A stretch of 64,000 nt of DNA, taken from positions 152,700 through 216,699 of the IMG/VR virus record IMGVR_UViG_3300031857_000010; one strand, written 5' to 3'. The first letter of the stretch is position 1. Each line of letters begins with the position of its first letter. A program made the translations under genes and the position numbers. Below the pieces are notes generated by a model. The model did not search any database. It was not told where the DNA came from and was given only the letters and a program-made list of their open reading frames with translations. Shown here piece by piece: positions 5,428 through 64,000 of the stretch.

Positions 5428-5906
5428 GATTGCTAAATTTCAGCAATTATAACGAAAAAAAATAATAAAAGTTACAATTTTAAATTTAAAAATTAATTAA
5501 CGGGGGTTTCTATCAAATCTTTTACAAAGTGATTCCACTTATCCTCAGCGAATTGCTGAGCAGAATCTATGGACAAAAAAGTACCCAAATTTTTAGAATT
5601 TGTTGAATTATTGAAGGTTTCATTTCTGAATGCCCAACTTTGTAGGATCCATTGACCTGAATTTTTTCCAACAGGTTTTATTGTAAAAACTTCTTGACCC
5701 TCAAAAACTCCTTGTATCTCAGTAGGAAATTCGGAGTGGTTTTTCCAAAGTATGTTTTTTATTTTATACATTTTTTTATATTATTTTAGACACTAAGTAC
5801 ACTATTAATTTATTCAATAAAGAAAAAAAAGTTGCCATTAAACTAAATGCTATAAAAAGCATTAGCGTAAAATTGAAACAATAATTAAATTTTTCTTTAA
5901 TCTTAT

Positions 5907-6635
5907 TCATTTTCTAAACCACCAAATTTTACCATCATTAAGTGCATCACCCCAATTAATCATATCATTATCGTAATACTCTTTAGTGTTTTCTTGGAAC
6001 AATTCATAATCAGCTTCATATTCTTCTTGATCTAACTCATCCTCAAATTCTTCAAAACTTTTCTCTTCATGATTCGAGTTGAAAAAATCATATCTCTTCC
6101 ACCATAATTCTTTGCTAATAGATGAATAATCCGGTTCAATTTTGATTTCACCAACTTCATAGCCTCTATGTACAAAAGCAGGTAAGCCACAAAAAAATAT
6201 TTTTCTCCCATCATCTTTTTCCGGTTCAAGTAGATTGTATGGATGAGATATTATTTCACCAACTAATGTTTGAACACGAGCCATTGCGTACATAAGATCT
6301 GATGTGTGAAATTTATATACATCCCTTCCATTTGCTTTTAAATTACAAACACCAGAATCCCTTATATCAGCTTCATCCCACTTATATTTAATTCTATTCG
6401 TTTGTTTGTAATTTATTTCCCAGCAAATCCTATGAACACCCCTATCAATATATGGTATAAGATTAGGATTTTCATCCATTTCATTGAGAAATTTTATTGA
6501 ACTGGTATCTTCTTCATAATGCAACCACCAATTTGCAGGACATCCATTGTTAATACCTAAACTGTGTTCCTTACCTTCTATACTATAGACAGTATATGGT
6601 TTATCGTTGATTAAAATATCAAATACCTTTCTCAT
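5907..6635 (-). CDS. hypothetical protein
   Basis: 242-aa ORF in gene run. Confidence 0.7.
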   Translation of the reverse strand: MRKVFDILINDKPYTVYSIEGKEHSLGINNGCPANWWLHYEEDTSSIKFLNEMDENPNLIPYIDRGVHRICWEINYKQTNRIKYKWDEADIRDSGVCNLKANGRDVYKFHTSDLMYAMARVQTLVGEIISHPYNLLEPEKDDGRKIFFCGLPAFVHRGYEVGEIKIEPDYSSISKELWWKRYDFFNSNHEEKSFEEFEDELDQEEYEADYELFQENTKEYYDNDMINWGDALNDGKIWWFRK

Positions 6636-6916
6636 TTTTAAATAATCGATAATACAGTATTCTCAACAGGAAAAAAAACTTGTTTAATTTTTAATTTATG
6701 ATGTTCATCAATATCGAAAACATATCTATTTTCAACAATTGAAAACATTTTAACTTTAAAAGTAACTCTATCGATTATTGTAGTCAAATTGTCTCGATAA
6801 TGAAGTTCTTTTTTTTCTCTATCAAATGTTATAAATTCCATAAATTAAATATTTATTACTATTCTCTATAAATTTAATAAATTAAAATTATATTTACAAA
6901 CATATTAAGAATAAAA

Positions 6917-7537
6917 ATGAAAGAAGAGGAACTGCTTTTTGAATTAAATAAATTAGAGAATTTCACAAAAAAAATAAATTTTTTGAATGATCATTTGAAA
7001 AGATTGTCTTATGGATCAGCTAGGATTGTATATATTCTAGATAATTCAAGAGTTTTAAAACTAGCAAAAAATAAAAAAGGTTTGGTCCAAAATAGAAAAG
7101 AATATGATTTATACGATAATGGTAACGAAATTCTAGCTAAAATACTAAGGAGTGATGAAAAATATTTTTGGATTATAGTGGAAAAAGCTGATGTAATAAA
7201 TGAATCTGAATTTGAAAAAATAACTGGATTGAATTACGAATGTTATTGTGATTATTTGACTTACATTAGGAGAAAAATTGATCCAAGAAAATATATGAAC
7301 TTAGGTAATAAATTAGATGAAATAATTATTACTCAGATGATAAATCATACTTTTGTGAGTAAGCTCGTTGATTTTATTAAAGTCAGTGATATTGATATAA
7401 AAGACTTATACAAAGTAAGTTCATATGGTTTAACATATAGAGAAAATGAAGAAAAAATAGTATTAATAGATTATGGAATTACTAATGAAATATATTTTAA
7501 ATACTATAAAAACTATGAAAAAAGATTATTAAGATGA
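6917..7537 (+). CDS. protein-kinase-like fold protein
   Basis: GSARIVY Gly-loop, VLK Lys, helix-C Glu (NRKE), catalytic-loop DL..SSYG, IDYG (DFG-like). Confidence 0.7.
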   Translation: MKEEELLFELNKLENFTKKINFLNDHLKRLSYGSARIVYILDNSRVLKLAKNKKGLVQNRKEYDLYDNGNEILAKILRSDEKYFWIIVEKADVINESEFEKITGLNYECYCDYLTYIRRKIDPRKYMNLGNKLDEIIITQMINHTFVSKLVDFIKVSDIDIKDLYKVSSYGLTYRENEEKIVLIDYGITNEIYFKYYKNYEKRLLR

Positions 7538-7863
7538 TTTAATTTTTCATCTAAAATTCTTTTTATTATATCTCCGTGACAACTTTTTGGTTTGCAAAAA
7601 CAAACTAGATTTATATCTTGTTTAAGTGCTAAATAAAAAATTCTATTTAATTCTTTGCAAATTTCTTGATCTTTATTTTCTATTTTAGAAATTATATATT
7701 TTTCATAAGAAAATATGGATTCTTCTCTTGAAGAACAATGGAATTCTGCTTTTGTTTTATCTATTTCCAAATGAGTAAACGGATTTCCTAAAACAGACCC
7801 TCTACCGATATATATATCGTTTTTTTCTGGTTTTGATTTGCGTTTGTTTTTTACTCTAATCAT
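7513..7863 (-). CDS. DUF4326-like protein
   Basis: IYIGRGS.LGNPF and LVCFCKPKSCHGD motifs. Confidence 0.85.
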   Translation of the reverse strand: MIRVKNKRKSKPEKNDIYIGRGSVLGNPFTHLEIDKTKAEFHCSSREESIFSYEKYIISKIENKDQEICKELNRIFYLALKQDINLVCFCKPKSCHGDIIKRILDEKLNHLNNLFS

Positions 7864-8004
7864 TTTTTAAAGCAAACATTATCATATTAGCTTTATATAA
7901 ACTGTCATAATCCGCAACATTGATCCATTTAAAAAATAGAAATCTTCTTTGCACGAAATACTTATTTTTTGATTTTTTGATTCTGTATTTTGTAAACATA
8001 TCTT

Positions 8005-8430
8005 TTAGTAATGTAGGTCAAGATATAGGTTTTTATCTCCTTCATAAACTACAGGACACCATATTGGATGATATTGTTCTTTTGAATTTTCCATTTCTTC
8101 CTCACTTATTTTATTTAAAAAAGGTTCATCTCCTTTTATTTTAGGATATTGTTCTTTGTTCAAATAATGACCATCTTCTATTTTATTATTATGGTTTAAA
8201 CAATAGTGATAATGCTCACCTTCTTTTTTAACAACACCCCATCCATTTTTTTCAAAATAAACATCTTCTATCCTTTGGGATAAGACCAAAGAATCATGAG
8301 TCAATTCACCGGAGGCAATTTTTGTTTGAATGTACTCTAGTAATTGACCAACAGTATAATAGCCATTAAAAGCGTATCTTTTTAAATCTTCCTGATTTAT
8401 TTCTTCCGGTTTATTTTTTAAGATATCCAT
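8005..8430 (-). CDS. hypothetical protein
   Basis: 141-aa ORF in operon. Confidence 0.65.
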   Translation of the reverse strand: MDILKNKPEEINQEDLKRYAFNGYYTVGQLLEYIQTKIASGELTHDSLVLSQRIEDVYFEKNGWGVVKKEGEHYHYCLNHNNKIEDGHYLNKEQYPKIKGDEPFLNKISEEEMENSKEQYHPIWCPVVYEGDKNLYLDLHY

Positions 8431-8431
8431 A

Positions 8432-19232: not shown

Positions 19233-19504
19233 ATTTACAAATTTAAAGAATGAATCATATAAAACGTAAAAACCCGCGTTCAAGTTACACGGGCTTTTCA
19301 ACATACTGTTCAAATGTTAGTATCTTAATATATTATAATGAACGGTAAGTATCCATCCATTATTGTTAGCAACCATGTGTGAGTTAATAATGTCTATACT
19401 ATTGTTACCGAAACTTTTTTTCCAATCTTCGATCTGTTGATTTAATTCATTTGCAGCATTTTCAGCTACAACTGAAGAGGAGCCAAATATTTTAATCATA
19501 TTTT

Positions 19505-44186: not shown

Positions 44187-44226
44187 AATTTGTTTTAAAT
44201 ATTTGTTTCGTATTTGAACGTATTTT

Positions 44227-45200
44227 TTATTCACAAAGTTACAAACTTATCCACACCTCAGGGAGAGATAGATATACACAGGGAGAAGTTGATATCCATA
44301 GGGAGAACTATACTTTTTAATTTAAAAGTTATTTGACCATCTATTTATCCGAATTTATTCCTGATCTATTTTTTTTAATTAATTTATTTTTTTTGAATTA
44401 ATTCGTATTGGTATTTGACTTTGAATTAATTTATTTATTAATTCTTTTTTGTGGGGAGAGCTAAGCTTTGTTTTTTTTATTTAATTAATTTATTTAATTA
44501 TTTTTTTACCGATGATTTTAATTAAAGAATTAATTTTATTATTGTTTGTTTTGGTATTTTACTATGGGGAGAACTTATAATTTATTTATTATTTTATTTA
44601 ATTTATTTGACCAATTTTTTTTGACCAAAAAATGCAGGTTTGAATTCCGTCTACATTCTTCTCAACCATCGATTTTTTGCTGTTTTGGATAGGGAGAAGT
44701 ATAGACATGCTGGAATTTAACCTAATGATCGATTTTTTGTGGGATACAGTGGTAAAATGTGGGATAAAGTACTCAAAAAAATGTAGATATAGTTCACTTA
44801 ATTTTTTAAATACATTTTTTTCAACTCTGTACATTTTTTTTTCTAATTTTTTTCCCAGAAAATTCTCAACCAATTATGTGAAAGTCAAATACTTAAGTCA
44901 AATACCAAATTAATTTTTAATTTAATTTGTTGATAATCAGTCAAATACCTCAAAAAACAATAGAAACTTTTAAATTTAAAAGAAACTTTTAGATTTAAAA
45001 TTGGAATTTAACGATGGTCTTTGACTGTGGTAATAATTTTAAATTAAAAATTTTAAATTAAAAGTGGGGGAATGTGGGAATTTTAAATTAAAAAAAACTT
45101 TTAATTTGGACTTTGACTGTAGGTAATTTTAAATTTAAAAAGCTGATATATTTTTAATTAAAAAAATAATTAAATTAAAATAAATTTTAAATTTAAAAAG
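44227..45200. other. candidate replication origin / large non-coding region
   Basis: DnaA boxes TTATTCACA (44227) and TTATCCACA (44247); GGGAGA repeats; AT-rich stretch; TTTTAAATT(T)AAAA repeats. Confidence 0.5.
44259..44315 (+). repeat. 20-bp-period iteron-like direct repeats
   Basis: AGGGAGA at 44260, 44280, 44300; further GGGAGA copies near 44454, 44567, 44691. Confidence 0.7.
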
Positions 45201-45838: not shown

Positions 45839-46236
45839 TAGTTATAATTAGGGATGGTAAAATACCTCTGAAAGAATTCCGGGGTTACGAGGTCTTTGAC
45901 AGTACTGAGGTCTTTGACGGTACCTACGAGCATGCCATTTTTTTTGGTGAATATTGATCCCGCATCAGGAAAACAGTAAACACCATTTTCGTTAAGGGTT
46001 GCTATTATTCTTATGAAGAATAGTTCATTTTGTTTTTTTTGTTCCAGTGTCATCTTGAATTTAAACGTAAGGGACCTGCGGGAAGTTACAGGTCGATTTA
46101 ATATTTCAGATATACGATTATTAAAAAATAATTTACATTTTTGGGTAAAATTTCAGTTGAAGAAAAAAAATATAATTTTCTTAAACCTTTTTTAGTTATA
46201 TTAGTATTGATTGTAAAGGAAGTAAAAAAACAATAA

Positions 46237-47088
46237 ATGAGCAAGATTTTAATTATACTGGTTCTTTTACTCAGGATCCCAACCTGCAGGAACGTTGATC
46301 ACGAATTTGTGGACGGGGAAGACATGAGCAAAAAGGAGCCTTATAAATATTATGAGCTTTGTCTTAGGTCCATGTTAACGAATCCGGATTCCATGAATTT
46401 TGGACTGGGACCGGTGGTTCCTCCTATTAACAGTTTAAATTCAAAAGTTTTCCATGATACATTAGTTGATCAGACTATTGAATTAAGGTTAATGACGGAT
46501 GACGGAATGAATATAGTATTTAGGAATTTGACCAATCCTGAGATTTATAATGATATTGAATCTTATGAATTCAAGGCTTATGATTCAAAAAATAATATTG
46601 TTTACCTATCACATAAAAAACAATATGGATACTTCAGGTTCTTTGGAGTCAGTTTAAATACCGGGAACCAGTTTACCGTATATGTTAATGATACTCGGTC
46701 ATCCAATGAAAAAATGTATTCTTGGAAATATTCCCCGGATATGGATTATTTGTTGAAGTCTGGTGATCTAGATAATGATATTTACGGTTGGGGTCTGGTT
46801 ACGCTAAAAAATGGACAGGAGGGTCAAGCGATGTTTGAAAGATATACTGAATTTGTGACTAATATTAAATGGGTGACTTTTGACCAATTCAGTTATGTTC
46901 TTACCAAGATTCCTTTCCGGGATGGATATAAGTATGATAAGGATTATGAATTTTATTATTCGTTGATGGAGGGGAATGCTCTTCCCGGGATTAGATTAAA
47001 CGGAGATTACCTGTATCCAGTTACATATATTTTGGATGTCAAAGGCCATTTAATATCAGAAAAGATGACTGAAGTTAGGATAAAATGA
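46237..47088 (+). CDS. hypothetical exported protein
   Basis: 283 aa, hydrophobic N-terminus; TAAAC-N16-AGTATTGA promoter at 46182-46210. Confidence 0.7.
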   Translation: MSKILIILVLLLRIPTCRNVDHEFVDGEDMSKKEPYKYYELCLRSMLTNPDSMNFGLGPVVPPINSLNSKVFHDTLVDQTIELRLMTDDGMNIVFRNLTNPEIYNDIESYEFKAYDSKNNIVYLSHKKQYGYFRFFGVSLNTGNQFTVYVNDTRSSNEKMYSWKYSPDMDYLLKSGDLDNDIYGWGLVTLKNGQEGQAMFERYTEFVTNIKWVTFDQFSYVLTKIPFRDGYKYDKDYEFYYSLMEGNALPGIRLNGDYLYPVTYILDVKGHLISEKMTEVRIK

Positions 47089-47279
47089 CGGCATTTGACT
47101 CAATATGACAAGGTTTTTAACATTATGGTTAAAAAAGTTAGAAATATAACAATATAAAAATCAACAAGTTAGGAAAGACAAAGATTATTTATTCACATTG
47201 CTTGTCTATGTCATAAAAATAACAGATATTTGTCTTCTAAGTTATTAATTAAGTTAAACAATATAAATCAACGAGGAAC

Positions 47280-47957
47280 ATGAAAAATTCAAGGAAGGAA
47301 AAAAAGGCCAAGTTTGCAGATAAGGATCTACAAGATCTTAAGATGCTAGAAGAAATCAAATCTGGAAATGTGAATGCATATGAGGTGATATACAACAGGT
47401 ATTACCGTTATATTCAGTATCACTGTTTTATGTCTGTCAAAGACCAGCAATTGGCCAATGATTTGACTGTAGAGATTTTGACAAAAATTTATTTAAATAT
47501 TGACAAATACTCGGTCAAGTATACTTTTAATTCTTGGGTGTGGAGTATTGTCAAGAATTACGTCGTAGATTATATAAGGAAGAATAAGAACGAACCAGTT
47601 AACAGCAATCGAAATGCATCGATCGCTATTCAGGAAACCAGAGATGAGGGATCTGAATTCAGCACAGTGTATTCGAACCAGTTGGATTCTGGAGATATTA
47701 ATCCGGAGGAATTGATGCAAGCCAAGTCTACAGAGAGGATACGTAGAGAATTTGTATTGAACTTGTTGAATGGTTTGAATGAGCGAGAGAGGATGATCAT
47801 CATTCATTATTACTTTGACGAGATGAGTTATGATGAGATTGCTGCTAAGCTTAACATTGGACTAAGCCTTATGAAGGTAACCTTGTTAAGGACCAAGGAG
47901 AAGCTCAAGAATAAGATCGGAAGTTTTGACAAGATTTCTCACCTGCTTGCAGCCTAA
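47280..47957 (+). CDS. RNA polymerase sigma-70 factor, ECF subfamily
   Basis: Region 2 (AYE.IY.RY...LA.DL..E...K.Y.....Y.....F..W...I..N...DY.RK) and region 4 (L.ERER.I....YF..MSY.EIA..L.I.....K..L.R.K..L). Confidence 0.93.
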   Translation: MKNSRKEKKAKFADKDLQDLKMLEEIKSGNVNAYEVIYNRYYRYIQYHCFMSVKDQQLANDLTVEILTKIYLNIDKYSVKYTFNSWVWSIVKNYVVDYIRKNKNEPVNSNRNASIAIQETRDEGSEFSTVYSNQLDSGDINPEELMQAKSTERIRREFVLNLLNGLNERERMIIIHYYFDEMSYDEIAAKLNIGLSLMKVTLLRTKEKLKNKIGSFDKISHLLAA

Positions 47958-47971: not shown

Positions 47972-48439
47972 ATGAAAGAACTAAAAAGAATATTTAAAAG
48001 ATTAAAAAGATTTTTTGAAACGGATAGGTGGTTATTTCTGGATGATACCAGAGAGCCACCTATTCATTTAAAAAGAATATTCTATATTGTCCGTGATTAT
48101 GATGATTTTGTGGAGTACATTGAAACATATGGTATTCCGGAGATTATTTCCTTTGACCATGATTTAAATTTAGAGCATACTAATTTCTTTTTTGAGAATG
48201 GGGGTTTTAGGAATCCGCCAGATCCGAGATATGAGATTTTTAAATTTAAAACTGGATATGATTGTGCTTTATGGTTAATTGACTATTGTAAAAGGAACAA
48301 TAAAGAGTTAAAAAAGGTATTTGTACATAGTCATAATCCAATGGGTCAAAGAAACATTTACAACCTTATATGTAACTTTCAGAAAAAAGAATACGGTAAA
48401 ATAAACTGCAAAATAGTAAGATGGAAATACCAAAAATAG
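47972..48439 (+). CDS. cyclic-phosphate-processing receiver-domain protein (second copy)
   Basis: LFLDD.R.P, ISFDHDL, TGYDCA.WL, VHSHNP.G. Confidence 0.82.
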   Translation: MKELKRIFKRLKRFFETDRWLFLDDTREPPIHLKRIFYIVRDYDDFVEYIETYGIPEIISFDHDLNLEHTNFFFENGGFRNPPDPRYEIFKFKTGYDCALWLIDYCKRNNKELKKVFVHSHNPMGQRNIYNLICNFQKKEYGKINCKIVRWKYQK

Positions 48440-48617
48440 ATCCGAACTTAGACAATCAGATCAAGTTCGTAGAATTCATGATCGAGACACAGAATATTGA
48501 AATACTTGTGGCGATAAAAAACAGTCTTTTAGAACTAAAAAAGATAAAAGAAGAAAAAAAGATGTAACTTTGTGATAAGACATTACGTTTAAATTGAAAA
48601 ATCTAAAACTAAAAACT

Positions 48618-52052: not shown

Positions 52053-52064
52053 ATTTAATTTATG

Positions 52065-53794: not shown

Positions 53795-53810
53795 AGTTTT
53801 CTGTTTTTTT

Positions 53811-53842
53811 AATCAATACGGATTTAAATTAAAAACGTTTAA
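53811..53842 (-). promoter_or_regulatory. ECF-type promoter (representative of >=16 copies)
   Basis: TTAAAC-N16-CGTATTGATT, 17 nt upstream of start codon. Confidence 0.8.
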
Positions 53843-54293
53843 GAAAAATTAAACTATTTTATATTTTTTTGAAATATAATTTGAAATTAGGTCTTTGACA
53901 AATAACTCAGCTATTTCAGAATCCATAAGAGGTTTCATTCTAACTACTTCTTTTGAAGGAAGTTGAATAGTATCATTAATATAGTATTCGATCCTAAATA
54001 TTTGTTCTGGTTCTTTCATTAGGCAGTATACCAGAATAAATTTAAGATTATTTGAACGGTCACGGATTAGGAAATTGATTTCTCCTAGTTCGGTTTCAAA
54101 ATATCTTTTTTTAATCTGGAGCTTATAAGCTTCATAATTTGAACCTTCATAAATTTTACCGGGAATATCGTCCTCAATAATATTTACAGAATAATCAATT
54201 TTTCTGGGCTTTGACATAGAAGTAATCATTATTTTAAATTTAAAAAAGCAAACCCGATTTTCACCGGGCTTGCTTTTATTGCTGATTTGCGGA

Positions 54294-55154: not shown

Positions 55155-55439
55155 GTTTTTTTAATTTAGAATTTAAACGTAGTTTTTTAATTTAAGTTAC
55201 AGTGATTTATTTCTTTTGTTATCAATACGGAACAAAAAGAAAAAGGTTTGACTAAATTAAAAAATTTTTTTAATTCAAAACACCGGAAAAAATGTAAATT
55301 AAAAATTTAGATTCGTATATCTGTATGAAAATAGCCTCCAGTTTCCGGGCTGCTCGAGCTGGTCCGGACTGTAAAATAACTGGACAAAAAAAAACCGCCT
55401 CCATTTCTGGAAGCGGCTTTTTGGGTTGAGACCTTAAAA

Positions 55440-56060: not shown

Positions 56061-56450
56061 TGTAATTGAGTTTTGGGGATTTAATTTAATTTGTTTTGAA
56101 TTTTACTGATTAATTAACAATTGACTGTTTGAAACTATATTTGCTTAATCCGATACAAATGTAGATATATTTTATTATCCGTGTCAAATTTCTTATAAAA
56201 GAAATGTTGTAAGTTGCTGATAATCAATCAAATAATTTTTTATTATTTTTTATTATTTTTTTAAATTATTTAATTTTTGATTATTTTTTATTAATTCCGA
56301 GTTCATTTTCAAGATGCTGGAGCAGGTATTTTGCGTAGCTGGTGAGTATAATATTTTTCTCAAATACGAACTGTTCTCTATGTTCTGAAACGGCTTTTTC
56401 GTAAGAAAGTTTCAGTTCCTTATATTTTTCTAGGTCAAAAACTAATTTAT

Positions 56451-56873
56451 TCATTTGCTTGAGAATGTTTTTTCAAGTTTATCAACGTTAGGTTTACCGA
56501 TTTCAAATGAATAATCAGGAGCCTTAAAAGTATATTCTCCCTTTTCATCGATCAATAGGGAGAATCTGTACTTTTCAAGACTTCTAATTTCACGATTAAT
56601 TTTAACTCGATATCCGGGAGAGCATGGACACATGGAGCATCCACAAAATCTATCCCAGACGACTTTTATTTCATCTTCATTAAATACTGTTTTAAGATCA
56701 TTTACAATTTTGTTTAAATGAATTTGACCTTCTGCCGTAAGCCTACCTTTAGCATTACGACGATTTTCAAGTACTTCGAGGGCATTTTCTCCAATAATGG
56801 GTTGCCCTATTGTTTTCGATGCTTCATCATTAAAGAATGATGGATCAAAATAAATTTCTCCAATTGACTTCAT
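56451..56873 (-). CDS. phage hypothetical protein (GCSMCPCSPG motif)
   Basis: W...CGC.MCPCSPG. Confidence 0.65.
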   Translation of the reverse strand: MKSIGEIYFDPSFFNDEASKTIGQPIIGENALEVLENRRNAKGRLTAEGQIHLNKIVNDLKTVFNEDEIKVVWDRFCGCSMCPCSPGYRVKINREIRSLEKYRFSLLIDEKGEYTFKAPDYSFEIGKPNVDKLEKTFSSK

Positions 56874-58272
56874 AAAATTAATTTTCTTGATTTAAATTAT
56901 ATACTTCTTCCTCATCAAGTCCGTGTTGAACTACGGCTTGGTCTTGGATGTGATCAATCAATGCGATGATACCTTCAAGAGCTTCATACTCTTTAGTTTT
57001 TGTAATAGGATTACTATTTGAATCTGTTCTGTATTGAAGTTCCAAAAGAGCTTGTTTTTGGTCTTTTAGAAGTTTCAAATCAACATTTTGTATTTTGATA
57101 TCGTATTGCATGATTTAGTTTTTTTGTTCAGTACGTTTTTAATTAAAAAAGGTTTGACTAAATTACAGAATAGTCGCTTACTTTTTTAATAATCTTTTTG
57201 GATGGCCAGTTTAAATACCTTTCATTTATCTTAAGTGCTAGAAAATAAAGGGTTTGACCACCATTACAAGTCATTATCATTTGCACATATTCTTCTGCTA
57301 CGGTACCATCTTTCATTTTATAACGCAGCAATTTTATTGAATTTGTGCTGCCTACATTTCCGATAACCACTGGATTTACTTCAGAATCCTTTTTTGTTTT
57401 TATATAAGCTTTAGCTGTTGAATCTAATCCGACATTAATATTCACAATATTTTTCATTTTTAACTTCCCTCCACTATCCTTGATTTAAAATTTAAATTGT
57501 CTCACCCATAAATTCATAGATGATTGTTTTTTGATCTTGTTCAGATAAAATATCCCAAACATCATCATCGACGCAAGTTATCTTATCCATGAAGTCATCT
57601 ACATTACGTAGTTCTTGTAATCGTCCATCTACAAAGTAAGAAGTTTGTAGACCTGTATTTGGGTTTTGTAATTTGACTGTAGGGAGAATACCCGCTACAA
57701 ATTCATTTCTATTTTCTGGATTACGTGGCATATCTTTTTTTAATTTAAACGTAAATTTTTATTTTTTGTTACTTATTTTATTTTTCTTCTGTTTCACCGG
57801 TTTCAGTGTCCACCTCAAAAGACCTTTCACTATCTATTTCTTTGACATGTACATACCAGTTAGGATTCATTGCTACATTGGCCAGCAGCATTTCAGCTGC
57901 TTCAGCTGGAGATGATGCTTTATAACTCATTGAGAGTTTGCATTCGTACCATTTTTCTTGTTCCATATCTTATAGATCGTTTAAAATTTCTCTTGAAGCT
58001 ATTTTGCGGGACCCAACCCCGGTCGCAAGCACTGCTTGAATTTCTTTATCTAGATCATCTACTGTTTTAAAATTTCTTGGACTCATCGGTAAGGATCTCT
58101 GAAGTTGCATATTAGATATCGAGAATGGAGTCCCGCTATCTTGCCACCCTCCATAATAAACATAACTCAACACATTATCTTGATCTAATATCACACTGAG
58201 TGTTTTTGCATTGCCTTGAGGCCCATATGTTGGATCAAACAAGCGGTAAATTATAAGTCTCTTTTTCATATG

Positions 58273-58656
58273 TTATGCTGTTATTGATTTTTGAATGTAC
58301 AGACCGTAGTCCACTGATATAACACTGTCAAATTTCTTTCCGTCCACTATTTCACCGTTATAAACCCAATTAGGTTGAACCCTTGGATTATAACGAATTC
58401 TCTGCTCGTTATCTTTTTCGAAGTTTTCAGTTCGAATCTCAATTTCCTTACAAAGGACCCAAGCACACACTGTTTTATTAGCACCGTCAAATATCTTCTG
58501 AGCGGTCGTTTTGTAATTCTTCAGTATACAATCATGCATGTTTAATTGAACATCTGTAGGATGATGGTATTCTATTTTACCATCCGGATACTCGATTTTC
58601 CACTTCATGTAGTTCTTACCGGTACCTAAATTGAATCTTACTTTTATACTTTTCAT
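58273..58656 (-). CDS. phage hypothetical protein
   Basis: VRFNLG.G.NYMKWK...K.VCAW..C...YNP. Confidence 0.7.
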   Translation of the reverse strand: MKSIKVRFNLGTGKNYMKWKIEYPDGKIEYHHPTDVQLNMHDCILKNYKTTAQKIFDGANKTVCAWVLCKEIEIRTENFEKDNEQRIRYNPRVQPNWVYNGEIVDGKKFDSVISVDYGLYIQKSITA

Positions 58657-59131
58657 GCGTCTATTAGGTCTAATTCAGTTAAAATATTTTTTTCTTCTTC
58701 AGTCAGTTCGTCGAAACATTCTACATCACAATACCATAATGAGAATGGTACTTCTGAAAAGAATTCCTCAACTTCAGATTCAAGGTTTTCTTTTGTTCTA
58801 CCGTCGATCCGGAATGTGCGGGAAACGTTTGTAGAACTGTTTTTGTCAAAGACATGGATGGTTACCGTTTTCATATTAATCTTCTTGTAGATATTGTTCT
58901 TCTAAGTATAGTGCTATTGTTTCTGGACTTTCACCTTCATTCACCTCCACAACATCGATGTGTTTATGAATTAGTTCTATTGCTTTTTCTTTTCCGAAAC
59001 CGTGGTTTTTCATTAGAGCATCTACAACTTGTTTATGTTCCATAACTATCATTTTTTAATCAATACGATTTTAAATTAAAAAGGTTTAAAATTTATAAAA
59101 AAAAATATATTTATAAGTAAATAAGCTTTTA

Positions 59132-59791
59132 ATGGGAAATATTGAAAAATTAAGGTTTTTGATTAGGTCATTGATTCAAGAAACGATCATGACCAAACAT
59201 TTTATGGATAGAAGGTTTTTAAGACTGGATAGTAGTGATACTGATTTTCCGGGAACTTATCCTAAATTTAGAGAAACAGTAGATGACGCTATTAATTTTT
59301 TATGGAAAAAAGTGGATTTTGACAAAGACCTAAGACTGGCAATTGAATTAAAATCCCCACAGACATTCACAGCATTTGATAAGGAAAAAAAAGAATTTTC
59401 TAAGGGTGATAGAATTTACTTCTTAGTTCAGCATGGTAATGAACTAGAGACCTTAGTTTTTGATAGAAAGGATAAAGTTGATTTAAGGGTTGACTACTAT
59501 GTTCCTTTTGTAGAATTAAAGAATTTTGTTGTAAACAACAATATTTCTTATTTGACCAGTAAAGAGATTAAACAAATATTAAAAAAACCAGTACCTGTAT
59601 CTACTCAACCAAAAGAATTAATTTATTTGGTAAACGGTAAAAAATGGGTTTTTGACAAAGAAGGTTCTAAGTTTTTCGAAAGAAATAAAAAAGAAAATTC
59701 TTATGATGTTTACGACATACTGGATGATAAAATTGAAAATGTCAAATTAACTCAACAACAAAAAGATGAAATATTATCTTACTTGCTATAG
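59132..59791 (+). CDS. hypothetical protein, putative late gene
   Basis: TATTTAT at 59108; N-terminal LR.LIR.LIQE helix. Confidence 0.65.
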   Translation: MGNIEKLRFLIRSLIQETIMTKHFMDRRFLRLDSSDTDFPGTYPKFRETVDDAINFLWKKVDFDKDLRLAIELKSPQTFTAFDKEKKEFSKGDRIYFLVQHGNELETLVFDRKDKVDLRVDYYVPFVELKNFVVNNNISYLTSKEIKQILKKPVPVSTQPKELIYLVNGKKWVFDKEGSKFFERNKKENSYDVYDILDDKIENVKLTQQQKDEILSYLL

Positions 59792-60577
59792 TAATATTTA
59801 ACATTTTCAAGAAAACTCCACTCTCTTAAACTTAAGTTTTTACTACCAATATCATTAACTTTTTCTAGAACATCATTAAGATATAATACTTCTTTTTCTG
59901 GTACTAGTGCTTTTACATTTTTCTCGTACCCGTTTTCTTTAATGTATATTTTAAGTTTTTCTATTGAGTCGTCATACACATCGCAGTATGCTACCTGTTT
60001 ACCTTCCTCGTGATTAGTTCTTTCAAAAAAATGCCATGCCTCCTTCAAGAAGGCAAGTAAAATATCCTCTGACCTTGCGATTATCAAGATATTAGTCCAA
60101 TCACACCATCCTATTTTAACCAAATCTACTGAAGAAGGATTATCGTTCATTTTAACTCTTTTCAATTTTTTGGATGATATATTCATCCACATTACCACCT
60201 ACAATACAACCATTACTTGAAATCAAATCAGATGATGCTATGTTATTTGACATTTCCTCAATAGCATCCTCCAAAGTAGATTCTGAATCCATTTCAATTT
60301 CAACAACCATCTTTACCTCTACAAATGCTTTCTTTGTTTTTGGTGTATAATCACAAATGTTATCATCACATTCAGTCCAAATCCTGAAATCATTTGTTGC
60401 TACACCAACATACACTCCAAGTTTATCTTGACAATAATCTTTGAAAACAATAGGAATATTCACATCTGAGATATTTAATTCTCTGCATAGGTCAATAATA
60501 CCTTGTGGAATTTCAAGTTCTATTTTCATAATATTTTGTTTTTTAGTCAATACGGATTTAAAATAAAAAGGTTTAAA

Positions 60578-60988
60578 TTATTCCATAATTTCATTAACTA
60601 TTTTTGCCGAAGAAACAACCATAGTTTTTATAACCTTACCATCAACATATCTAGATAGGGAGAACTCATCAACTGAATCCAGATGTTCTTGAACTTTGTC
60701 AAATATCTCATTATATTCTTTTTCTGACAAAAGCGTTCCACAAGTCCATCCAACATTGCCAATCTCTTTTATTCGATAACAGCCCCAAGGGTTTTCTACT
60801 GAGTTAACTTCCCAATCATCCTCCGTCAATTCAGCCAAACTCTTTTCACGATTTTTAATGGTCACACTCTTTGTATAACCACAATCTGAACAGTGAACAT
60901 ATTCTTCACCGGTTTTGTAATAAAAATCATCGTAGCAATCAGGAGACTTGCAATTAGGACATTCGATGTAATCAATAACTGAACCCAT
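60578..60988 (-). CDS. zinc-ribbon protein
   Basis: CPNC...C..CGY; ECF-type promoter 61013-61042. Confidence 0.7.
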   Translation of the reverse strand: MGSVIDYIECPNCKSPDCYDDFYYKTGEEYVHCSDCGYTKSVTIKNREKSLAELTEDDWEVNSVENPWGCYRIKEIGNVGWTCGTLLSEKEYNEIFDKVQEHLDSVDEFSLSRYVDGKVIKTMVVSSAKIVNEIME

Positions 60989-61096
60989 ATTTTTAAGTTT
61001 TAAAGTTTAATATCAATACGGATTTAAAAAAAAAAGGTTTAAAAAAAAGGTGAACTTTTTTTAGTTCACCTTAATTTAGTCGGGGGAGAGATATTA

Positions 61097-61291
61097 TTAG
61101 TTTGCACTAACTGTATCTACCACAGTTGCAGAATCAGCAACAGTTGCAGTTGAATCTACGGTTTCTACAACCGTTGAATCAACAGCCGTAGAATCTACAG
61201 TGGCCGTTTCTTCAGTAGCAGATCCACCGCCACATGAAGTAAGTGCAAAAGTTGTTGCAACAAGACTTAGGATAACAAATACTTTTTTCAT
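61097..61291 (-). CDS. small lipoprotein with T/V/D/S repeats
   Basis: Lipobox LTSC; (V/A)DST repeats resembling Bacteroidota O-glycosylation D-(S/T) sites. Confidence 0.75.
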   Translation of the reverse strand: MKKVFVILSLVATTFALTSCGGGSATEETATVDSTAVDSTVVETVDSTATVADSATVVDTVSAN

Positions 61292-61413
61292 TTTATTTTT
61301 ATATAAATTTAGTTTGTGAGTACATAAATAGCATATAATTTTCACAGAATAAAGAATTAAAATGAATTTAATTTAATTTGTTAATAACTTTTTGATTATT
61401 AACAAGTTATGTT

Positions 61414-61803
61414 TTATTTAAGTACGAACAGGGTGGTTAATACTACTATTATTCCAGTGTAAAGCATATTCTTTTTCTTTGCCCGATTTATTTGACCATG
61501 ATAATTTATAATCAAGGAATTTTTCATTTCCAATGAATCACGACAAGTAGAACACTCATCGAGTTGCATTTGAAGTTTCTGCTTCAATGATTTATTCTCA
61601 TTTTGTTGAAAGGTCATATTTTCAGAAAGTTCATCAACCTTTTTTTCATTTAGATCACCACGAATCAAATCTTGTTTGATAAAGGATAAATATCTCATTG
61701 GAAAACAAACCAAGCTATCATCAGCGATGATCATATCGTTCTGTGAAAAACTCTTTGAGTTCGACAGCATCACGACCACGAGCAATAGGAAGATTTTTTT
61801 CAT
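61414..61803 (-). CDS. exported coiled-coil protein with C-terminal TM
   Basis: Overlaps 3' end of 61721-62221. Confidence 0.6.
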   Translation of the reverse strand: MKKIFLLLVVVMLSNSKSFSQNDMIIADDSLVCFPMRYLSFIKQDLIRGDLNEKKVDELSENMTFQQNENKSLKQKLQMQLDECSTCRDSLEMKNSLIINYHGQINRAKKKNMLYTGIIVVLTTLFVLK

Positions 61804-62221
61804 TTTTCAAAGTTTTAATTTTTTTAGTATTTGTGTTTTTTGCTTCAGTTTTGACTGGGATTGGTGTTGGGTTCTCGAAGGGATGAGATTGTATTTTCAA
61901 TTTTGGTTTTGAAGCAATCACATTGTTTAGAGAATCAATGATAACATGTAGAGAATAAATCGAATCTACATTAGTATTATTCATTTCCTCCATCTTCTTG
62001 TTTAAATCATTCAGTTGCTTAACTGTAACGATTAGGTCTTTGACTTGGTCACTTGTATCAGCAGTACTCGATGAAGGAATAACAACTTTGTCGTCGAATA
62101 TTACTCTATCAGAAGTATTTCTGTACTTGTATTTATTATAGAGTCTATTTTTATTCTTATAAACATAGTACATACCGAATATCAGAAGTAACCCGGTAAT
62201 AGTCAAGACGAATTTTTTCAT
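61721..62221 (-). CDS. membrane-anchored coiled-coil protein
   Basis: N-terminal TM then coiled coil. Confidence 0.6.
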   Translation of the reverse strand: MKKFVLTITGLLLIFGMYYVYKNKNRLYNKYKYRNTSDRVIFDDKVVIPSSSTADTSDQVKDLIVTVKQLNDLNKKMEEMNNTNVDSIYSLHVIIDSLNNVIASKPKLKIQSHPFENPTPIPVKTEAKNTNTKKIKTLKNEKNLPIARGRDAVELKEFFTERYDHR

Positions 62222-62262
62222 GTATGAAAGTTTTAAAATTCAAATGCAAAAATAATAATATT

Positions 62263-62838
62263 TTATTTTTTAAGACCCAAATCTTCAAAATTTGTATTTA
62301 ATATTTCTTGACCTTCCTGAAGTTTTGTTTTGATTTGATTATCAATGAATTGCTGCATCTTTTGAACACCATATACCCTAACCATTTGTTCTAATGACAA
62401 ACCTCCTTTAAATCCTGAACGTGTATAATTGTCCCACAAACCCCACAAAATTTCTTTTTCAGACTGTTTTGCAATCTTTTTATATACTTTTTCTTTTTGT
62501 TTTTCGTCGGTGAGATGCTCGATCAGAGACTCGATAACTGAGTGGTCAGAAATTTTGCTTTCATTTTCGTAAAAGTTCCATCCTAATTCATTATACATTC
62601 GACTCCTCCAATTATGTGCTTGCAGAAGTTGCAACAGTTTTTGTTCACTTTCCTTGGAGATATGAATATCAGCTTCACCACCCCATCCATCATTGTTGTA
62701 ATAGCCAATATTCTTTTTGTCTAGCCAAATGTCACAAAACATTCCGGCCAAATCGTGTCCAATTCCAAGCTTAATGTTTTTAAGGACTACACGGTCCTTA
62801 ATTTCTTGAGGAAGTTCAAGTCTATTAATATTTCCCAT
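62263..62838 (-). CDS. phage hypothetical protein (NDGWGG motif)
   Basis: ORF with ECF-type promoter 62856-62884. Confidence 0.65.
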   Translation of the reverse strand: MGNINRLELPQEIKDRVVLKNIKLGIGHDLAGMFCDIWLDKKNIGYYNNDGWGGEADIHISKESEQKLLQLLQAHNWRSRMYNELGWNFYENESKISDHSVIESLIEHLTDEKQKEKVYKKIAKQSEKEILWGLWDNYTRSGFKGGLSLEQMVRVYGVQKMQQFIDNQIKTKLQEGQEILNTNFEDLGLKK

Positions 62839-63023
62839 TTTCTTGTGTTTTTTAATCAATACTGATTTTTTTAAAAAAGGTTTATAATTTTTAATTTTTT
62901 TTTGGATTAGATATTTGACAAGATTTTAGATATACGACTTTAAAAAACTAATTTACATTTTTAATTTAAATTAAAAACCCACCCCCTGAAATAATCACAG
63001 GAGGTGGGAAAACATGATTTTTT

Positions 63024-63302
63024 TGGTGGGCCCAGTAGGACTTGAACCTACGACCTGCGGATTATGCTTACCACTATAGCTTTCACCACCCTCACGGTTT
63101 GTGGTCTGGACTTTGTCTTCATCCTCATCATTACATGTTCGGATGGTTGCCGTTAAGCCTCTACACCTTCCCGATAATCTGGGCTTGGCTCGGCGTTGGG
63201 ATTTTACACCGTTCACCGAATTTGACAACATACTACCATAAAATTACTTCTATGGCGACCCTAATTTAAGTCCGATGCTCTAACCAACTGAGCTATGGGC
63301 CC
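63024..63302 (-). tRNA. tRNA(CAU), Ile2-like, split by a group I intron
   Basis: Exon 1 GGGCCCATAGCTCAGTTGGTTAGAGCATCGGACT (63302-63269); exon 2 CATAATCCGCAGGTCGTAGGTTCAAGTCCTACTGGGCCCACCA (63066-63024). Confidence 0.9.
63067..63268 (-). ncRNA. group I self-splicing intron (202 nt, no ORF)
   Basis: After U33, ends in G; IGS GGGTC pairs with exon GACT; core-like motifs AAATTCGGTGAA, AACGCCGAGCCAAG, GTGTAGAGGCT, AAGACAAAGTCC. Confidence 0.88.
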
Positions 63303-63375
63303 TTTTCCCGGTCAACGCATTTAATCAGGAAAGAGATGCAAATGTAGTTATTATTTGATAAAATCCAAAATCAAT

Positions 63376-63591
63376 TTATCGGTACAGAATTACAAAATCA
63401 CCGAAATAAGAGTCAAATACTTTGACCAAATTCTCATAATCACCAGACATCATTTCTTCTCTGATTTTATTTGAGTCCAAATCCAATTGTTTGGAAAGTC
63501 GATTTGCTACCCCAATCAAATGAAAAGCATTTCCTTCAGGACCGGTCAAATCAATTTCTATTTTATCTTTTTTTGGTTTTTCCTTAATCAT
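63376..63591 (-). CDS. phage hypothetical protein (IDLTGP.GNAF motif)
   Basis: IDLTGPEGNAF.L.G...EM.SGDYE.L...FD..FG. Confidence 0.75.
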   Translation of the reverse strand: MIKEKPKKDKIEIDLTGPEGNAFHLIGVANRLSKQLDLDSNKIREEMMSGDYENLVKVFDSYFGDFVILYR

Positions 63592-63941
63592 ACAATATCT
63601 ATTGTTTCAGGGTTCTTAATCATATCTTCTAATTCCTCAACCAAATAAATTAATCCATAGGTTGAAACATCACGGAACTCTATGTTACGAGTATCATAAC
63701 CCGTATCTAATAAACATAATTCACCATCCGTTGAAATTGCACCAATTACTTCGTTAGATTGGTCATCAATATAACTATGTATAAAACCCTGAGTTAATTG
63801 AATGTTTCCTTCAGGATTTTCTTCACTATCTGTTAGTTTCACATAAAGTTCTTTTACTTCCTCCCGACGAGCAAGTAGGGTTTTTACAACTTCATCTCTC
63901 AAGGAGGCTGCTTCCTTTCTAAATTCGATTGCTGATTTCAT
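63588..63941 (-). CDS. hypothetical protein
   Basis: ORF with ECF-type promoter 63957-63986. Confidence 0.65.
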   Translation of the reverse strand: MKSAIEFRKEAASLRDEVVKTLLARREEVKELYVKLTDSEENPEGNIQLTQGFIHSYIDDQSNEVIGAISTDGELCLLDTGYDTRNIEFRDVSTYGLIYLVEELEDMIKNPETIDIV

Positions 63942-64000
63942 ATTATTGTTTTTTAATCAATACGAATCGAATTAAAAAAGGTTTAATTAATTAAAACTAA

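What the first reader, a model, noticed from the sequence alone, without database searches (positions are those of the whole stretch)
5451..63986. Phage-encoded ECF sigma factor with a readable regulon of at least 16 promoters
Seen: motif (TGTAAC|T(T/C)AAAC)-N16/17-(CGTA|CGTT|AGTA) lies shortly upstream of genes at 5451-5476, 19263-19289, 44217-44243, 46064-46090, 46182-46210(+), 48563-48593(+), 53817-53842, 55176-55201, 55226-55251, 57132-57157, 57748-57772, 59064-59089, 60551-60576, 61017-61042, 62860-62884 and 63961-63986, always oriented with the downstream gene. Established: AAC-N16/17-CGT is the classic ECF promoter (Bacillus SigW TGAAAC-N16-CGTA). An ECF sigma is encoded at 47280-47957 behind a near-consensus host promoter (CTTG-N20-GATATTTG). 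Inference: a host sigma -> phage ECF -> middle-gene cascade. Two subtypes (GTAAC...CGTTT and AAAC...(C/A)GTATTGA) may mean two sigmas or two strengths. No obvious anti-sigma is adjacent.
Basis: partly seen in the sequence, partly recalled or inferred. Interest (0 to 1): 0.7.

Follow-up and report, generated by a model that had tools for sequence, protein, structure and literature searches.

The report
Phage sigma cascade, two promoter families
An uncultivated giant phage of Bacteroidota encodes its own ECF sigma factor, and two sharply defined ECF-type promoter families mark dozens of its genes; this is a readable multi-sigma cascade of a known general kind, but which family the sigma reads is not settled.

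Summary
All 16 sites exist and face their genes.

The sites are two discrete families, not one.
- Class B (TTAAACCTTTTT-N10-CGTATTGAT) has 9 window copies. A near-identical contig raises this to at least 30 copies, in an array over a block of at least 40 kb.
- Class A (TGTAACTT-N14/15-wCGTTTAAAT) has 7 listed copies and about 14-17 in the genome.

The ECF sigma gene (47280-47957) and its host-type promoter (47202-47232) are confirmed. The promoter is conserved in relatives down to 45% identity.

- The phage also encodes two RpoD-like sigmas outside the window, behind a class A promoter.
- It also encodes a fourth, very divergent sigma-like protein.
- Class B changes between lineages while class A does not.

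Across three distant phage clades the CGTA-type family (B) tracks the phage ECF. A complete 519-kb relative with one ECF has both families. ECF-less relatives have neither.

Best reading: host sigma A, then phage ECF, then B and probably A, then RpoD-like sigmas, then late genes. No RNA data were usable.

The parts
47280..47957 (+). ECF (group 4) sigma factor gene, here called sigma3, 225 aa
   Evidence: It has Pfam Sigma70_r2 and r4_2 only. TIGR02937 scores 90 bits (cut-off 42.9). The best solved homologue is B. subtilis SigW, 5wuq, E 1e-14. Syntenic orthologues at 45-100% identity occur in 10 lineages.
47202..47232 (+). Host sigma-A-type promoter of sigma3 (TTG-N20-GATATTTG)
   Evidence: Located. 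The element is conserved upstream of every sigma3 orthologue examined. It matches the flavobacterial -33 TTG / -7 TAnnTTTG consensus (PMC9723704) except for G in place of T at the first base.
46183..46210 (+). Class B promoter upstream of the lipoprotein-sigma3 operon
   Evidence: Matrix score 35. A class B variant sits upstream of sigma3 on the same strand in all 10 lineages. This holds even in the three where the lipoprotein gene is absent.
46237..47088 (+). Predicted lipoprotein gene (283 aa) between the class B promoter and sigma3
   Evidence: The N-terminus is hydrophobic and ends in a conserved Cys. There are no Pfam hits. It evolves fast, at 32-68% identity.
47972..48439 (+). cREC_REC-domain gene immediately downstream of sigma3
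   Evidence: Pfam PF20274, E 1e-21. Synteny is conserved in the relatives.
53813..53840 (-). Class B promoter before the GP88-family gene 53051-53794
55222..55249 (-). Class B promoter, upstream member of a tandem B+A pair before the DUF932 gene 54294-55154
   Evidence: The tandem arrangement is conserved in L004, L066, L006 and L008.
57128..57155 (-). Class B promoter before 56878-57111
59060..59087 (-). Class B promoter before 58876-59052
60547..60574 (-). Class B promoter before 60152-60529
61013..61040 (-). Class B promoter before 60578-60988
62856..62883 (-). Class B promoter before 62263-62838
63957..63984 (-). Class B promoter before 63588-63941. The array continues beyond the window end.
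   Evidence: A further 21 copies lie in the 22-kb extension of the near-identical contig G001.
5451..5475 (-). Class A promoter before 5083-5427
   Evidence: Score 25.7.
19263..19288 (-). Class A promoter before the ATG at 19232 (ORF 18495-19232)
   Evidence: Score 24.0.
44217..44242 (-). Class A promoter heading the long leftward run of about 100 small accessory genes (from 43380-44186 downwards)
   Evidence: Score 27.2. The orthologous site is conserved in L004, L006 and L008.
46064..46089 (-). Class A promoter, divergent from the sigma3 operon, before 45838-46053
   Evidence: Score 33.6. It is conserved in all relatives.
48564..48589 (+). Class A promoter before 48618-49058 and the following plus-strand genes
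   Evidence: Score 34.0. It is conserved in L004, L006, L008, L010 and L068.
55176..55200 (-). Class A promoter, downstream member of the tandem pair before the DUF932 gene
   Evidence: Score 29.7.
57748..57772 (-). Class A promoter (atypical -35, AAGTAACA) before 57492-57731
   Evidence: Score 23.4. The orthologous gene carries a class A promoter in L004 but a class B promoter in L006 and L008.
56156..56187 (-). Host sigma-A-type promoter with a roughly 95-nt conserved leader before the ParB-like HTH gene 55440-56060
   Evidence: It is conserved in L004, L006, L008 and L010.

Best explanation
The window is the transcription-control end of an uncultivated jumbo phage of Bacteroidota, roughly 240-260 kb.

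Proposed sequence of events:
1. Host RNA polymerase with its primary sigma starts at a few TTG...TAnnTTTG promoters. One of them (47202-47232) makes the phage ECF sigma, sigma3.
2. Sigma3 on host core polymerase then reads ECF-type promoters (AAC-N16/17-CGT). These form two discrete families.
3. Class B (TTAAACCTTTTT-N10-CGTATTGAT) stands before almost every small gene of a leftward block of at least 40 kb. It also stands upstream of sigma3's own operon, which would give positive feedback. This is the family I assign to sigma3 with most confidence.
4. Class A (TGTAACTT-N14/15-wCGTTTAAAT) heads longer operons. These include the 44-kb accessory-gene run in the window and, outside it, the operon of two RpoD-like sigmas and a topoisomerase. 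It is probably read by sigma3 as well, as a second tier.
5. The RpoD-like sigmas and a divergent sigma-like protein then serve the late genes, which carry a third motif (aCTATTTAt).

Shown:
- the genes, the motifs, their statistics and their positions;
- conservation of the motifs across relatives;
- co-occurrence of the motif families with the ECF gene.

Inferred:
- that the motifs are promoters;
- which factor reads which family;
- the temporal order.
For: Motif reality.

Sigma3 identity and its host-type promoter, conserved in 10 lineages.

Class B array and its link to sigma3:
- There are 30 copies with identical geometry, 29 of them on one strand.
- A class B variant lies upstream of sigma3 on the same strand in all lineages, even where the intervening gene is missing. 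Phages 7-11 and phiEco32 have the same layout, with the sigma gene behind both a host-type and a phage-specific promoter (PMC4331800). Autoregulation is also the standard route to ECF promoters (PMC7776599).
- The cross-lineage consensus of class B (GAAACC-N16-CGTAT) is SigW-like, and SigW is sigma3's nearest characterised homologue.

Co-occurrence across distant clades:
- G006 has one ECF and only a TGAAACC...CGTATAA family, about 25 sites.
- G411 is a complete 519-kb genome with exactly one ECF. It has both families: 54 CGTATAGTAC sites, 45 of them in the first 46 kb, and 38 CGTTtAA sites genome-wide.
- G005 and G007 (90-100% complete) have no ECF and no enrichment of the motif.

Points bearing on class A:
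- Class A precedes sigma2 in all relatives that have the tandem sigmas.
- The specificity residues equivalent to RpoE R171, S172 and N84 are K199, V200 and D97. K199 and D97 are invariant in every sigma3 orthologue examined. V200 is replaced by L in two distant lineages (P0049, P0053) (rule from PMC7776599).
- This near-constancy fits the invariant C(-31) and G(-12) of both families and the constancy of class A.
Against: - No transcription start sites are available. The only RNA-labelled runs hold short contigs of relatives and are probably DNA.
- Two discrete families without intermediates argue for two readers or a cofactor, yet only one ECF is found.
- Class B varies at -34, -33, -13 and -11 between lineages while the sigma3 specificity residues vary little. 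In L004 and L066 class B has lost both AAC and CGT (GATACC...GGAAT).
- A candidate covariation between residue 210 and position -33 failed when tested on L130 and L132.
- Class A closely resembles TSS-mapped host ECF promoters of Flavobacterium psychrophilum, which have a 16-nt spacer and tCGTTT.
- About 20 kb of this phage is still unseen, by CheckV's 83% estimate. The record plus G001 covers about 239 kb.
Confidence: 0.55

Rival explanations
1. Sigma3 reads only class B. Class A is read by a host ECF sigma of the flavobacterial SM6 type, so the phage wires its second tier, including its RpoD-like sigmas, into a host stress sigma.
For: - Four TSS-mapped SM6 promoters of F. psychrophilum read (G/A)(T/C)AA(C/T)-N16-CGT(T/A)T, three of them tCGTTT. 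This is the same spacer and -10 as class A.
- Class A is invariant across phages whose sigma3 is only 45% identical, as expected for a conserved host reader.
- G006 has an ECF and the class B type but no class A type.
- A and B are discrete, with no intermediates.
Against: - Class A is found only in phages that carry their own ECF. It is absent from the ECF-less relatives G005 and G007.
- The extended class A motif is not enriched in 401 sampled Bacteroidota genomes: 4 hits against about 14 control hits.
- Depending on a normally sequestered host ECF for an essential tier is risky for a lytic phage.
Confidence: 0.22
2. Sigma3 reads only class A. Class B is read by another, fast-evolving phage factor. 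Candidates are the variable RpoD-like sigma2, a cofactor that retargets a sigma, or a virion-delivered protein.
For: - Sigma3's three known specificity positions vary little and class A is invariant, whereas class B changes at the matching bases (rule).
- Sigma2 is the fast-evolving sigma, at 64% identity where sigma1 is 88%, and it varies in regions 2.4 and 4.2.
- Class B geometry also fits a 17-nt spacer between hexamers such as TAAACC and TATTGA.
- In G411 the class-B-like array sits at the genome end bounded by terminal repeats, as expected for genes read before any phage protein is made.
Against: - G006 has an ECF, one RpoD-like sigma and only the class B type.
- The class B -35 is TGTAAC or GAAAC in most lineages and its -10 is CGTA, which is the classical ECF pattern.
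- Sigma2 itself lies behind a class A promoter, so class B would fire late. That fits poorly with a dense array before small accessory genes.
- Class B upstream of sigma3 is conserved in all lineages.
Confidence: 0.13
3. The motifs are not promoters. They would instead be another kind of repeated intergenic element, such as operator sites, packaging or recombination signals, or translation signals.
For: There is no direct transcript evidence. Conservation extends beyond the -35 and -10 cores into the region between -10 and the start codon.
Against: - The elements are bipartite with fixed ECF spacing.
- They keep a strict orientation with the downstream gene and a constant short distance to the ATG.
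- Several sit just after hairpin-plus-T-run elements that look like terminators.
- They match TSS-mapped ECF promoters of a related host.
- They co-occur with an ECF gene.
Confidence: 0.05

Closest known systems
Coliphage phiEco32 gp36 and Salmonella phage 7-11 sigma (phage-encoded sigma of the ECF-like kind, with mapped or predicted middle and late promoters)
   Same: The phage sigma uses host core polymerase. The sigma gene lies behind both a host-type and a phage-specific promoter. Two motif versions are attributed to one phage sigma. The promoters are well conserved (PMC4331800; PMC5333181 listed).
   Different: Those are roughly 77-kb podoviruses of enterobacteria with a single phage sigma, few promoters and a phage anti-sigma against the host sigma. 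Here there are at least 30 plus about 15 promoters, three to four sigma-like genes, a Bacteroidota host signal set, and no detectable sequence relationship shown.
Bacillus subtilis SigW (ECF; TGAAAC-N16-CGTA, recalled from the literature and not tested here)
   Same: It is the best solved-structure and NCBIfam match to sigma3. It has K and D at the RpoE R171 and N84 positions, as sigma3 does. Its promoter consensus equals the cross-lineage consensus of class B.
   Different: Sigma3 scores 80 bits against the 209-bit equivalog cut-off, so it is not a SigW orthologue. No RsiW-type anti-sigma is adjacent. Sigma3 belongs to a phage-only clade whose cellular relatives are at most 26% identical.
Flavobacterium psychrophilum SM6 promoters (host ECF regulon, TSS-mapped)
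   Same: The pattern is xxAAC-N16-CGT(T/A)T, with the CGT at about -12 to -10. This is nearly the class A core.
   Different: These are host chromosomal promoters of type IX secretion and Band-7 genes. The extended phage flanks (TT after AAC, TAAAT after CGTT) are not a host-wide motif.
Sigma cascades of SPO1 (gp28, then gp33/34) and T4 (gp55/gp33); RpoD-like and minimal sigmas of group 2 jumbo phages
   Same: Temporal classes are set by successive phage sigmas on host core polymerase. RpoD-like sigmas in jumbo phages of Bacteroidetes (Lak, PTm1) were already noted (PMC7824862).
   Different: Here an ECF-type sigma is the entry point, and ECF-type promoters form the largest class. The pairing of later sigmas with motifs is only inferred.
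Sigma factors annotated in crAss-like and Prevotella Lak phages
   Same: They are the nearest phage hits to sigma3 (24-30% identity), are annotated sigma-W-like, and have Bacteroidota hosts.
   Different: They are distant, and no promoter families are linked to them in the records searched.

Membership tests
ECF (group 4) sigma-70 family | Only the sigma2 and sigma4 domains are present, with no region 1.2 or 3, and the family model is passed. | tested here: met
   Pfam r2 plus r4_2 only. TIGR02937 scores 90.1 bits against a cut-off of 42.9. By contrast, sigma1 and sigma2 carry r1.2, r2, r3 and r4.
ECF (group 4) sigma-70 family | Cognate promoters of the type AAC-N16/17-CGT, usually including one upstream of its own operon. 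| tested here: inconclusive
   Both families have this core, and class B lies upstream of sigma3 in all lineages. Binding or initiation was not testable. In lineages L004 and L066 class B lacks both AAC and CGT.
ECF (group 4) sigma-70 family | An adjacent anti-sigma factor. This is common but not universal. | tested here: not met
   The neighbours are a lipoprotein and a cREC_REC protein. No anti-sigma domain was found by Pfam in the 7 flanking genes.
SigW equivalog (NF007223 / TIGR02948) | The score reaches the curated equivalog cut-off. | tested here: not met
   80.5 bits against 209, and 69.6 bits against 243.
Bacteroidota sigma-A promoter | -33 TTG and -7 TAnnTTTG, about 19-21 nt apart. 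| tested here: met
   47202-47232 reads TTG-N20-GATATTTG, one mismatch from the consensus. The orthologous elements read TATATTTG or GATATTTG in all relatives. The consensus is from PMC9723704. Activity was not tested.
Phage sigma cascade (SPO1 / T4 / phiEco32 kind) | A phage sigma gene is expressed from a host-type promoter, and later classes carry distinct phage-specific promoters. | tested here: met
   The layout is shown in silico. Host-type promoters precede sigma3 and sigma1, class A precedes sigma2, and a third motif precedes the terminase and other large genes.
Phage sigma cascade (SPO1 / T4 / phiEco32 kind) | Temporal succession of the transcript classes. | not testable with these tools
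   There is no usable RNA run, and the phage and its host are uncultivated.

The most novel reading that the evidence does not exclude
One phage ECF sigma serves two discrete promoter families, because something switches or splits its specificity. There are two versions of this reading. In the first, a phage cofactor from the conserved sigma3 operon retargets it. In the second, class A is handed to a host stress ECF that the infection activates, perhaps through the co-transcribed lipoprotein. A linked possibility arises because the class-B-type array sits at the repeat-bounded genome end in the complete relative G411. The sigma might be delivered with the virion, so that ECF-type promoters act as true immediate-early promoters.
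Probability: 0.2. Interest if true: 0.8.

Novelty: new variant of a known kind. Interest (0 to 1): 0.58.

Why it matters
Transcription programmes of Bacteroidota phages are almost unstudied, and their hosts use non-canonical promoters and no Shine-Dalgarno sequences. This phage group offers a promoter code that can be read from sequence alone:
- four promoter classes;
- three or four sigma-like genes;
- dozens of near-identical sites;
- natural lineage-to-lineage variation in one class but not the other.

That makes three things possible:
- assigning temporal classes to hundreds of unknown genes, including anti-defence genes such as the Tad3 homologue;
- using a natural set of matched ECF sigma and promoter variants to test the ECF specificity code;
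- obtaining candidate orthogonal expression parts for Bacteroidota.

The puzzle of one ECF and two discrete families is directly testable with reporters.

Tried and rejected
1. RNA evidence. One search found only two 'RNA-Seq' runs, holding 5-6% of the words. When laid on 44000-49999 they gave short contigs of 90-99% relatives, flagged as probably DNA, with no read starts. There is therefore no TSS information.
2. Covariation between sigma3 residues and class B bases.
   - L203 (L/M/K) against the -35 failed on L066.
   - K210R against T at -33 held in 7 lineages but failed in L130 and L132.
   - The L3-loop residues (78-80) show no consistent mapping to position -13.
3. The 283-aa gene upstream of sigma3 as a hidden transcription factor. 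It has a signal peptide with a lipobox-like Cys, so this was rejected.
4. A second ECF in the 22-kb extension beyond the record. None was found.
5. A phage RNA polymerase among the large ORFs. None was found. The hits were topoisomerase IA, terminase, and collagen-like and CBM-like domains. No RNA-polymerase family search was run.
6. Cellular homologues of sigma3, to build a specificity dictionary. The best are 25-26% identical.
7. The extended class A motif as a host regulon. It is not enriched in 401 Bacteroidota genomes, and the 4 hits are unrelated to the phage. This does not exclude a host reader of the bare core.
8. Near-identical DNA in the phage collection. None was found.
9. G409 as an 'ECF-less' control. 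This was downgraded. The record is 88% complete, and its sigma2-like gene is preceded by TGTAAT-N16-CGTATAAG, so the ECF may lie in the missing part.
10. ORF294. Pfam and PDB sequence searches found nothing. The fold search gives mostly sigma factors, but at E 0.25-2 and low TM-scores, so 'sigma-like' is only probable.

Full report
CONTEXT

The window is the last 64 kb of a 216,699-bp IMG/VR virus record that CheckV rates 83% complete. It has about 30% G+C, and most genes lie on the minus strand.

Several features point to a Bacteroidota host:
- Leaders are A-rich and lack a Shine-Dalgarno sequence.
- The few host-like promoters fit the -33 TTG / -7 TAnnTTTG consensus of flavobacteria (consensus from PMC9723704).
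- Two phage sigmas begin MRQLKIT... and have the roughly 287-aa architecture with region 1.2 to region 4.
- One relative's contig was binned as a Bacteroidota MAG.
- The nearest phage homologues of the ECF sigma are in crAss-like and Prevotella Lak phages.

The relatives come from lake metagenomes.

THE OBSERVATION

All 16 sites are present and each faces its downstream gene.
- Two-block weight matrices separate two families cleanly.
- Class A is TGTAACTT, then 14-15 nt, then (T/A)CGTTTAAAT, giving an AAC-to-CGT spacer of 16 or 17. Seventeen sites score 20 or more in the record, against none in the shuffles. Thirteen are intergenic and stand 3-23 nt from the matrix end to an ATG.
- Class B is TTAAACCTTTTT, then 10 nt, then (C)CGTATTGAT followed by an A-run, with a fixed spacer of 16. 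It has exactly nine sites, scoring 33-42. The next best score is 13.6.
- All nine class B sites lie in window 46183-63984.
- Neither matrix picks up the other family, so there are no intermediates.

The ECF gene and the TTG-N20-GATATTTG element at 47202-47232 are confirmed.

A 108,663-bp contig (G001) carries an identical sigma gene and overlaps the record. It runs 22 kb past the record's end.
- Over window 46183 plus this extension there are 30 class B copies with identical 28-nt geometry.
- Twenty-nine are on the minus strand, about one per 1.3 kb.
- The ATG lies a median of 17 nt after GTAYTGA.
- No second ECF gene lies in the extension.

A family search of the whole record finds two further sigma-70 genes at record positions 67805-68668 (sigma1) and 68774-69631 (sigma2). 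Both carry regions 1.2, 2, 3 and 4, so they are RpoD-like.
- A class A promoter stands 23 nt upstream of sigma2.
- A TTG...TATATTTG promoter stands between sigma2 and sigma1.
- A topoisomerase IA gene follows.
- This arrangement is conserved in IMG/VR relatives whose sigma1 is 58-88% identical, and in the distant genome G411.
- Sigma1 keeps canonical, invariant DNA-reading helices, so it looks like a stand-in for the host primary sigma. Sigma2 is variable there.

A conserved core gene, ORF294 (record 32496-33380), is 91% identical in a relative. It hits the ECF model weakly. Its predicted fold retrieves almost only sigma factors, though at weak scores. It is probably a very divergent sigma.

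A third motif, aCTATTTAt, lies 6-44 nt before the ATG of large genes in the left 140 kb. These include the large terminase. I take this motif as the late class.

COMPARATIVE EVIDENCE WITHIN THE SIGMA3 CLADE

Syntenic loci were fetched for ten lineages with sigma3 at 45-100% identity.

Class A is unchanged at orthologous places in all of them.

Class B keeps its architecture but changes sequence by lineage:

| Lineage | -35 | -10 |
|---|---|---|
| this phage | TAAACC | CGTATTGA |
| L004 | GATACC | AGAATTGA |
| L066 | GATACC | GGAATTGA |
| L006 | GTAACC | GGTATTAA |
| L008 | GAAACC | AGTAWTA |
| L068 | TTTACC | CGTATTAT |
| L010 | GTAACT | CGTATTAA |
| L130 | GAAACC | CGTATTAT |
| L132 | GAAACC | AGTACTAA |
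| L067 | GCAATC | CGTAGTAA |

The consensus, GAAACC-N16-CGTAT, is what I recall as the SigW pattern.

In every lineage the intergenic region before sigma3 holds three elements:
- a class B promoter on the sigma strand;
- then the host-type promoter;
- and a class A promoter facing the other way.

This holds whether or not the lipoprotein gene intervenes.

Sigma3 diverges at the average rate of its neighbours.

The residues aligned with RpoE R171, S172 and N84 set positions -31, -34 and -13/-12 in ECF sigmas (PMC7776599). In sigma3 these are K199, V200 and D97. K199 and D97 are invariant in every orthologue examined. V200 is replaced by L in two distant lineages (P0049, P0053).

This near-constancy fits the constancy of class A. 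It also fits the invariant C(-31) and G(-12) of class B. It does not explain class B's changes at -34, -33, -13 and -11. My attempts to find a compensating residue failed (see Tried and rejected).

COMPARATIVE EVIDENCE ACROSS DISTANT CLADES

This was the most informative step.

| Genome | Size and completeness | Sigma genes | ECF-type promoter families |
|---|---|---|---|
| G411 | 518,809 bp, terminal repeats, 100% | one ECF (region 2 carries the sigma3 signature YTFNSW...D), tandem RpoD-like sigmas | both (detail below) |
| G006 | 189 kb, 74% | one ECF, one RpoD-like | about 25 TGAAAC(C)TTTTT-N10-CGTATAA sites genome-wide; no CGTT family |
| G005 | 90% | no ECF | no enrichment of WAAC-N16/17-CGTWT over the control |
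| G007 | 100% | no ECF | no enrichment of WAAC-N16/17-CGTWT over the control |
| G409 | 88% | no ECF found | ECF-like promoter before its sigma2-like gene, so not a clean control |

Both families in G411:
- 54 copies of TGTAAC-N17-CGTATAGTAC, 45 of them unidirectional in the first 46 kb and most of the rest at the other end;
- 38 copies of GTAAC-N16-CGTTtAA spread genome-wide, including one before the tandem sigmas.

Three conclusions follow:
- The CGTA-type family tracks a phage ECF in three of three clades.
- The CGTT-type family appears only where tandem RpoD-like sigmas exist.
- A complete genome with both families still has only one ECF.

INTERPRETATION

The simplest model that fits is a cascade: host sigma A, then sigma3, then ECF-type promoters, then RpoD-like sigmas, then late genes.

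I assign class B to sigma3 with about 0.75 probability, for these reasons:
- it sits in the autoregulatory position in all lineages;
- its consensus is SigW-like;
- it co-occurs with the phage ECF across clades;
- phages 7-11 and phiEco32 show the same dual-promoter layout.

I assign class A to sigma3 with about 0.6 probability, for these reasons:
- it shares the core and spacing of class B;
- its -35 is identical to that of class B in L006, L010 and G411;
- the sigma3 specificity residues vary little;
- it is absent from phages without an ECF;
- the complete genome G411 has only one ECF.

The discreteness of the two families remains unexplained by a single reader. It suggests either a cofactor or a second reader.

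The best second reader is a host ECF. Four TSS-mapped SM6 promoters of F. psychrophilum have the class A spacer and tCGTTT.

That class B genes are 'early' is an inference from three things:
- their density and small size;
- their content, which includes DUF932, GP88 and ParB-like genes;
- the terminal position of the equivalent array in G411.

COMPARISON WITH WHAT IS KNOWN

Already described:
- phage-encoded sigmas that redirect host polymerase (SPO1, T4, phiEco32 and 7-11);
- RpoD-like sigmas in jumbo phages of Bacteroidetes;
- sigma-W-like genes annotated in crAss-like phages.

In the papers I searched I did not find three things described:
- an ECF sigma as the entry point of a cascade with three or four sigmas;
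- ECF-type promoter arrays of 30-54 copies;
- a pair consisting of one invariant and one lineage-specific ECF-type family.

I therefore rate this as a new variant of a known kind.

Noticed in passing
window 44243-45404: A 1.2-kb AT-rich non-coding stretch lies exactly where the GC skew changes sign. It has iteron-like repeats: ATAGGGAGAACT four times, and AAGTCAAATAC with inverted copies about six times. A gap of 1.2-1.7 kb sits at the same place in the relatives. It is a candidate replication origin.
   Followed up: partly
window 1113-2658 and 51688-52137: There is an array of 14 tRNA genes behind a host-type promoter at 2974-3003. Two or three more tRNAs lie near 52 kb. Rfam also reports tRNA-like matches of 100-120 nt at 28957-29064, 33254-33354 and 51688-51807, which ARAGORN does not call. 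These may be interrupted or unusual tRNAs.
   Followed up: no
window about 63232-63338 (minus strand): A strong host-type promoter (63339-63368) is followed by a sequence that starts like a tRNA acceptor and D-arm (GGGCCCATAGCTCAGTTGG...). Neither ARAGORN nor Rfam calls a gene there.
   Followed up: no
window 29075-29803: This gene is a homologue of the Thoeris inhibitor Tad3 (Pfam PF25185, E 5e-25). It lies within the long operon headed by a class A promoter. Nearby are a PEP-synthase / pyruvate-phosphate-dikinase-like gene (23258-25657) and genes for an aminotransferase, a HAD RNA-repair-type domain, an AAA protein and a metallophosphatase.
   Followed up: partly
window 46237-47088 and 47972-48439: Sigma3 is flanked by a fast-evolving predicted lipoprotein gene (absent in three lineages) and a conserved cREC_REC-domain gene. 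There is no recognisable anti-sigma. Either neighbour could modulate sigma3 or a host ECF.
   Followed up: partly
protein P0013 (relative, 88% identical overall): This sigma3 orthologue looks like a natural chimera. Its N-terminal part resembles this phage, and its region 4.2 is of the L008/P0054 type (LKLNSMRVY...). It would be a useful natural domain swap for specificity tests, but its contig is only 1.7 kb.
   Followed up: no
window 55440-56187: A ParB-like HTH gene has a host-type promoter and a leader of about 95 nt that is conserved in four relatives. This suggests a regulatory RNA element or an operator.
   Followed up: no
record positions 15-137 kb (outside the window); possibly window about 2903 and 61291: A third promoter-like motif, aCTATTTAt, lies 6-44 nt before the ATG of large genes, including the terminase. 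It is taken as the late class. Its reader (sigma2, sigma1 or ORF294) is unknown.
   Followed up: partly
record 32496-33380 (outside the window): ORF294 is a core gene of this phage group, 48-91% identical in 17 viral contigs. It makes a weak match to ECF region 2, and its predicted fold retrieves mostly sigma factors. It is probably a very divergent sigma, perhaps analogous to T4 gp55.
   Followed up: partly
record 150606-151343 (just left of the window): This ORF combines GIY-YIG and double-HTH domains, which suggests a homing endonuclease. It produced spurious weak sigma region 4 matches.
   Followed up: no
G006 around 180.3 kb (distant relative): A roughly 33-nt element (AAATATTCTTTTTTTAAATAC-R-TCCCTATA) occurs twice, before the ECF gene and before the gene upstream of it. 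It is neither sigma-A-type nor ECF-type. It may be another promoter class in that phage.
   Followed up: no
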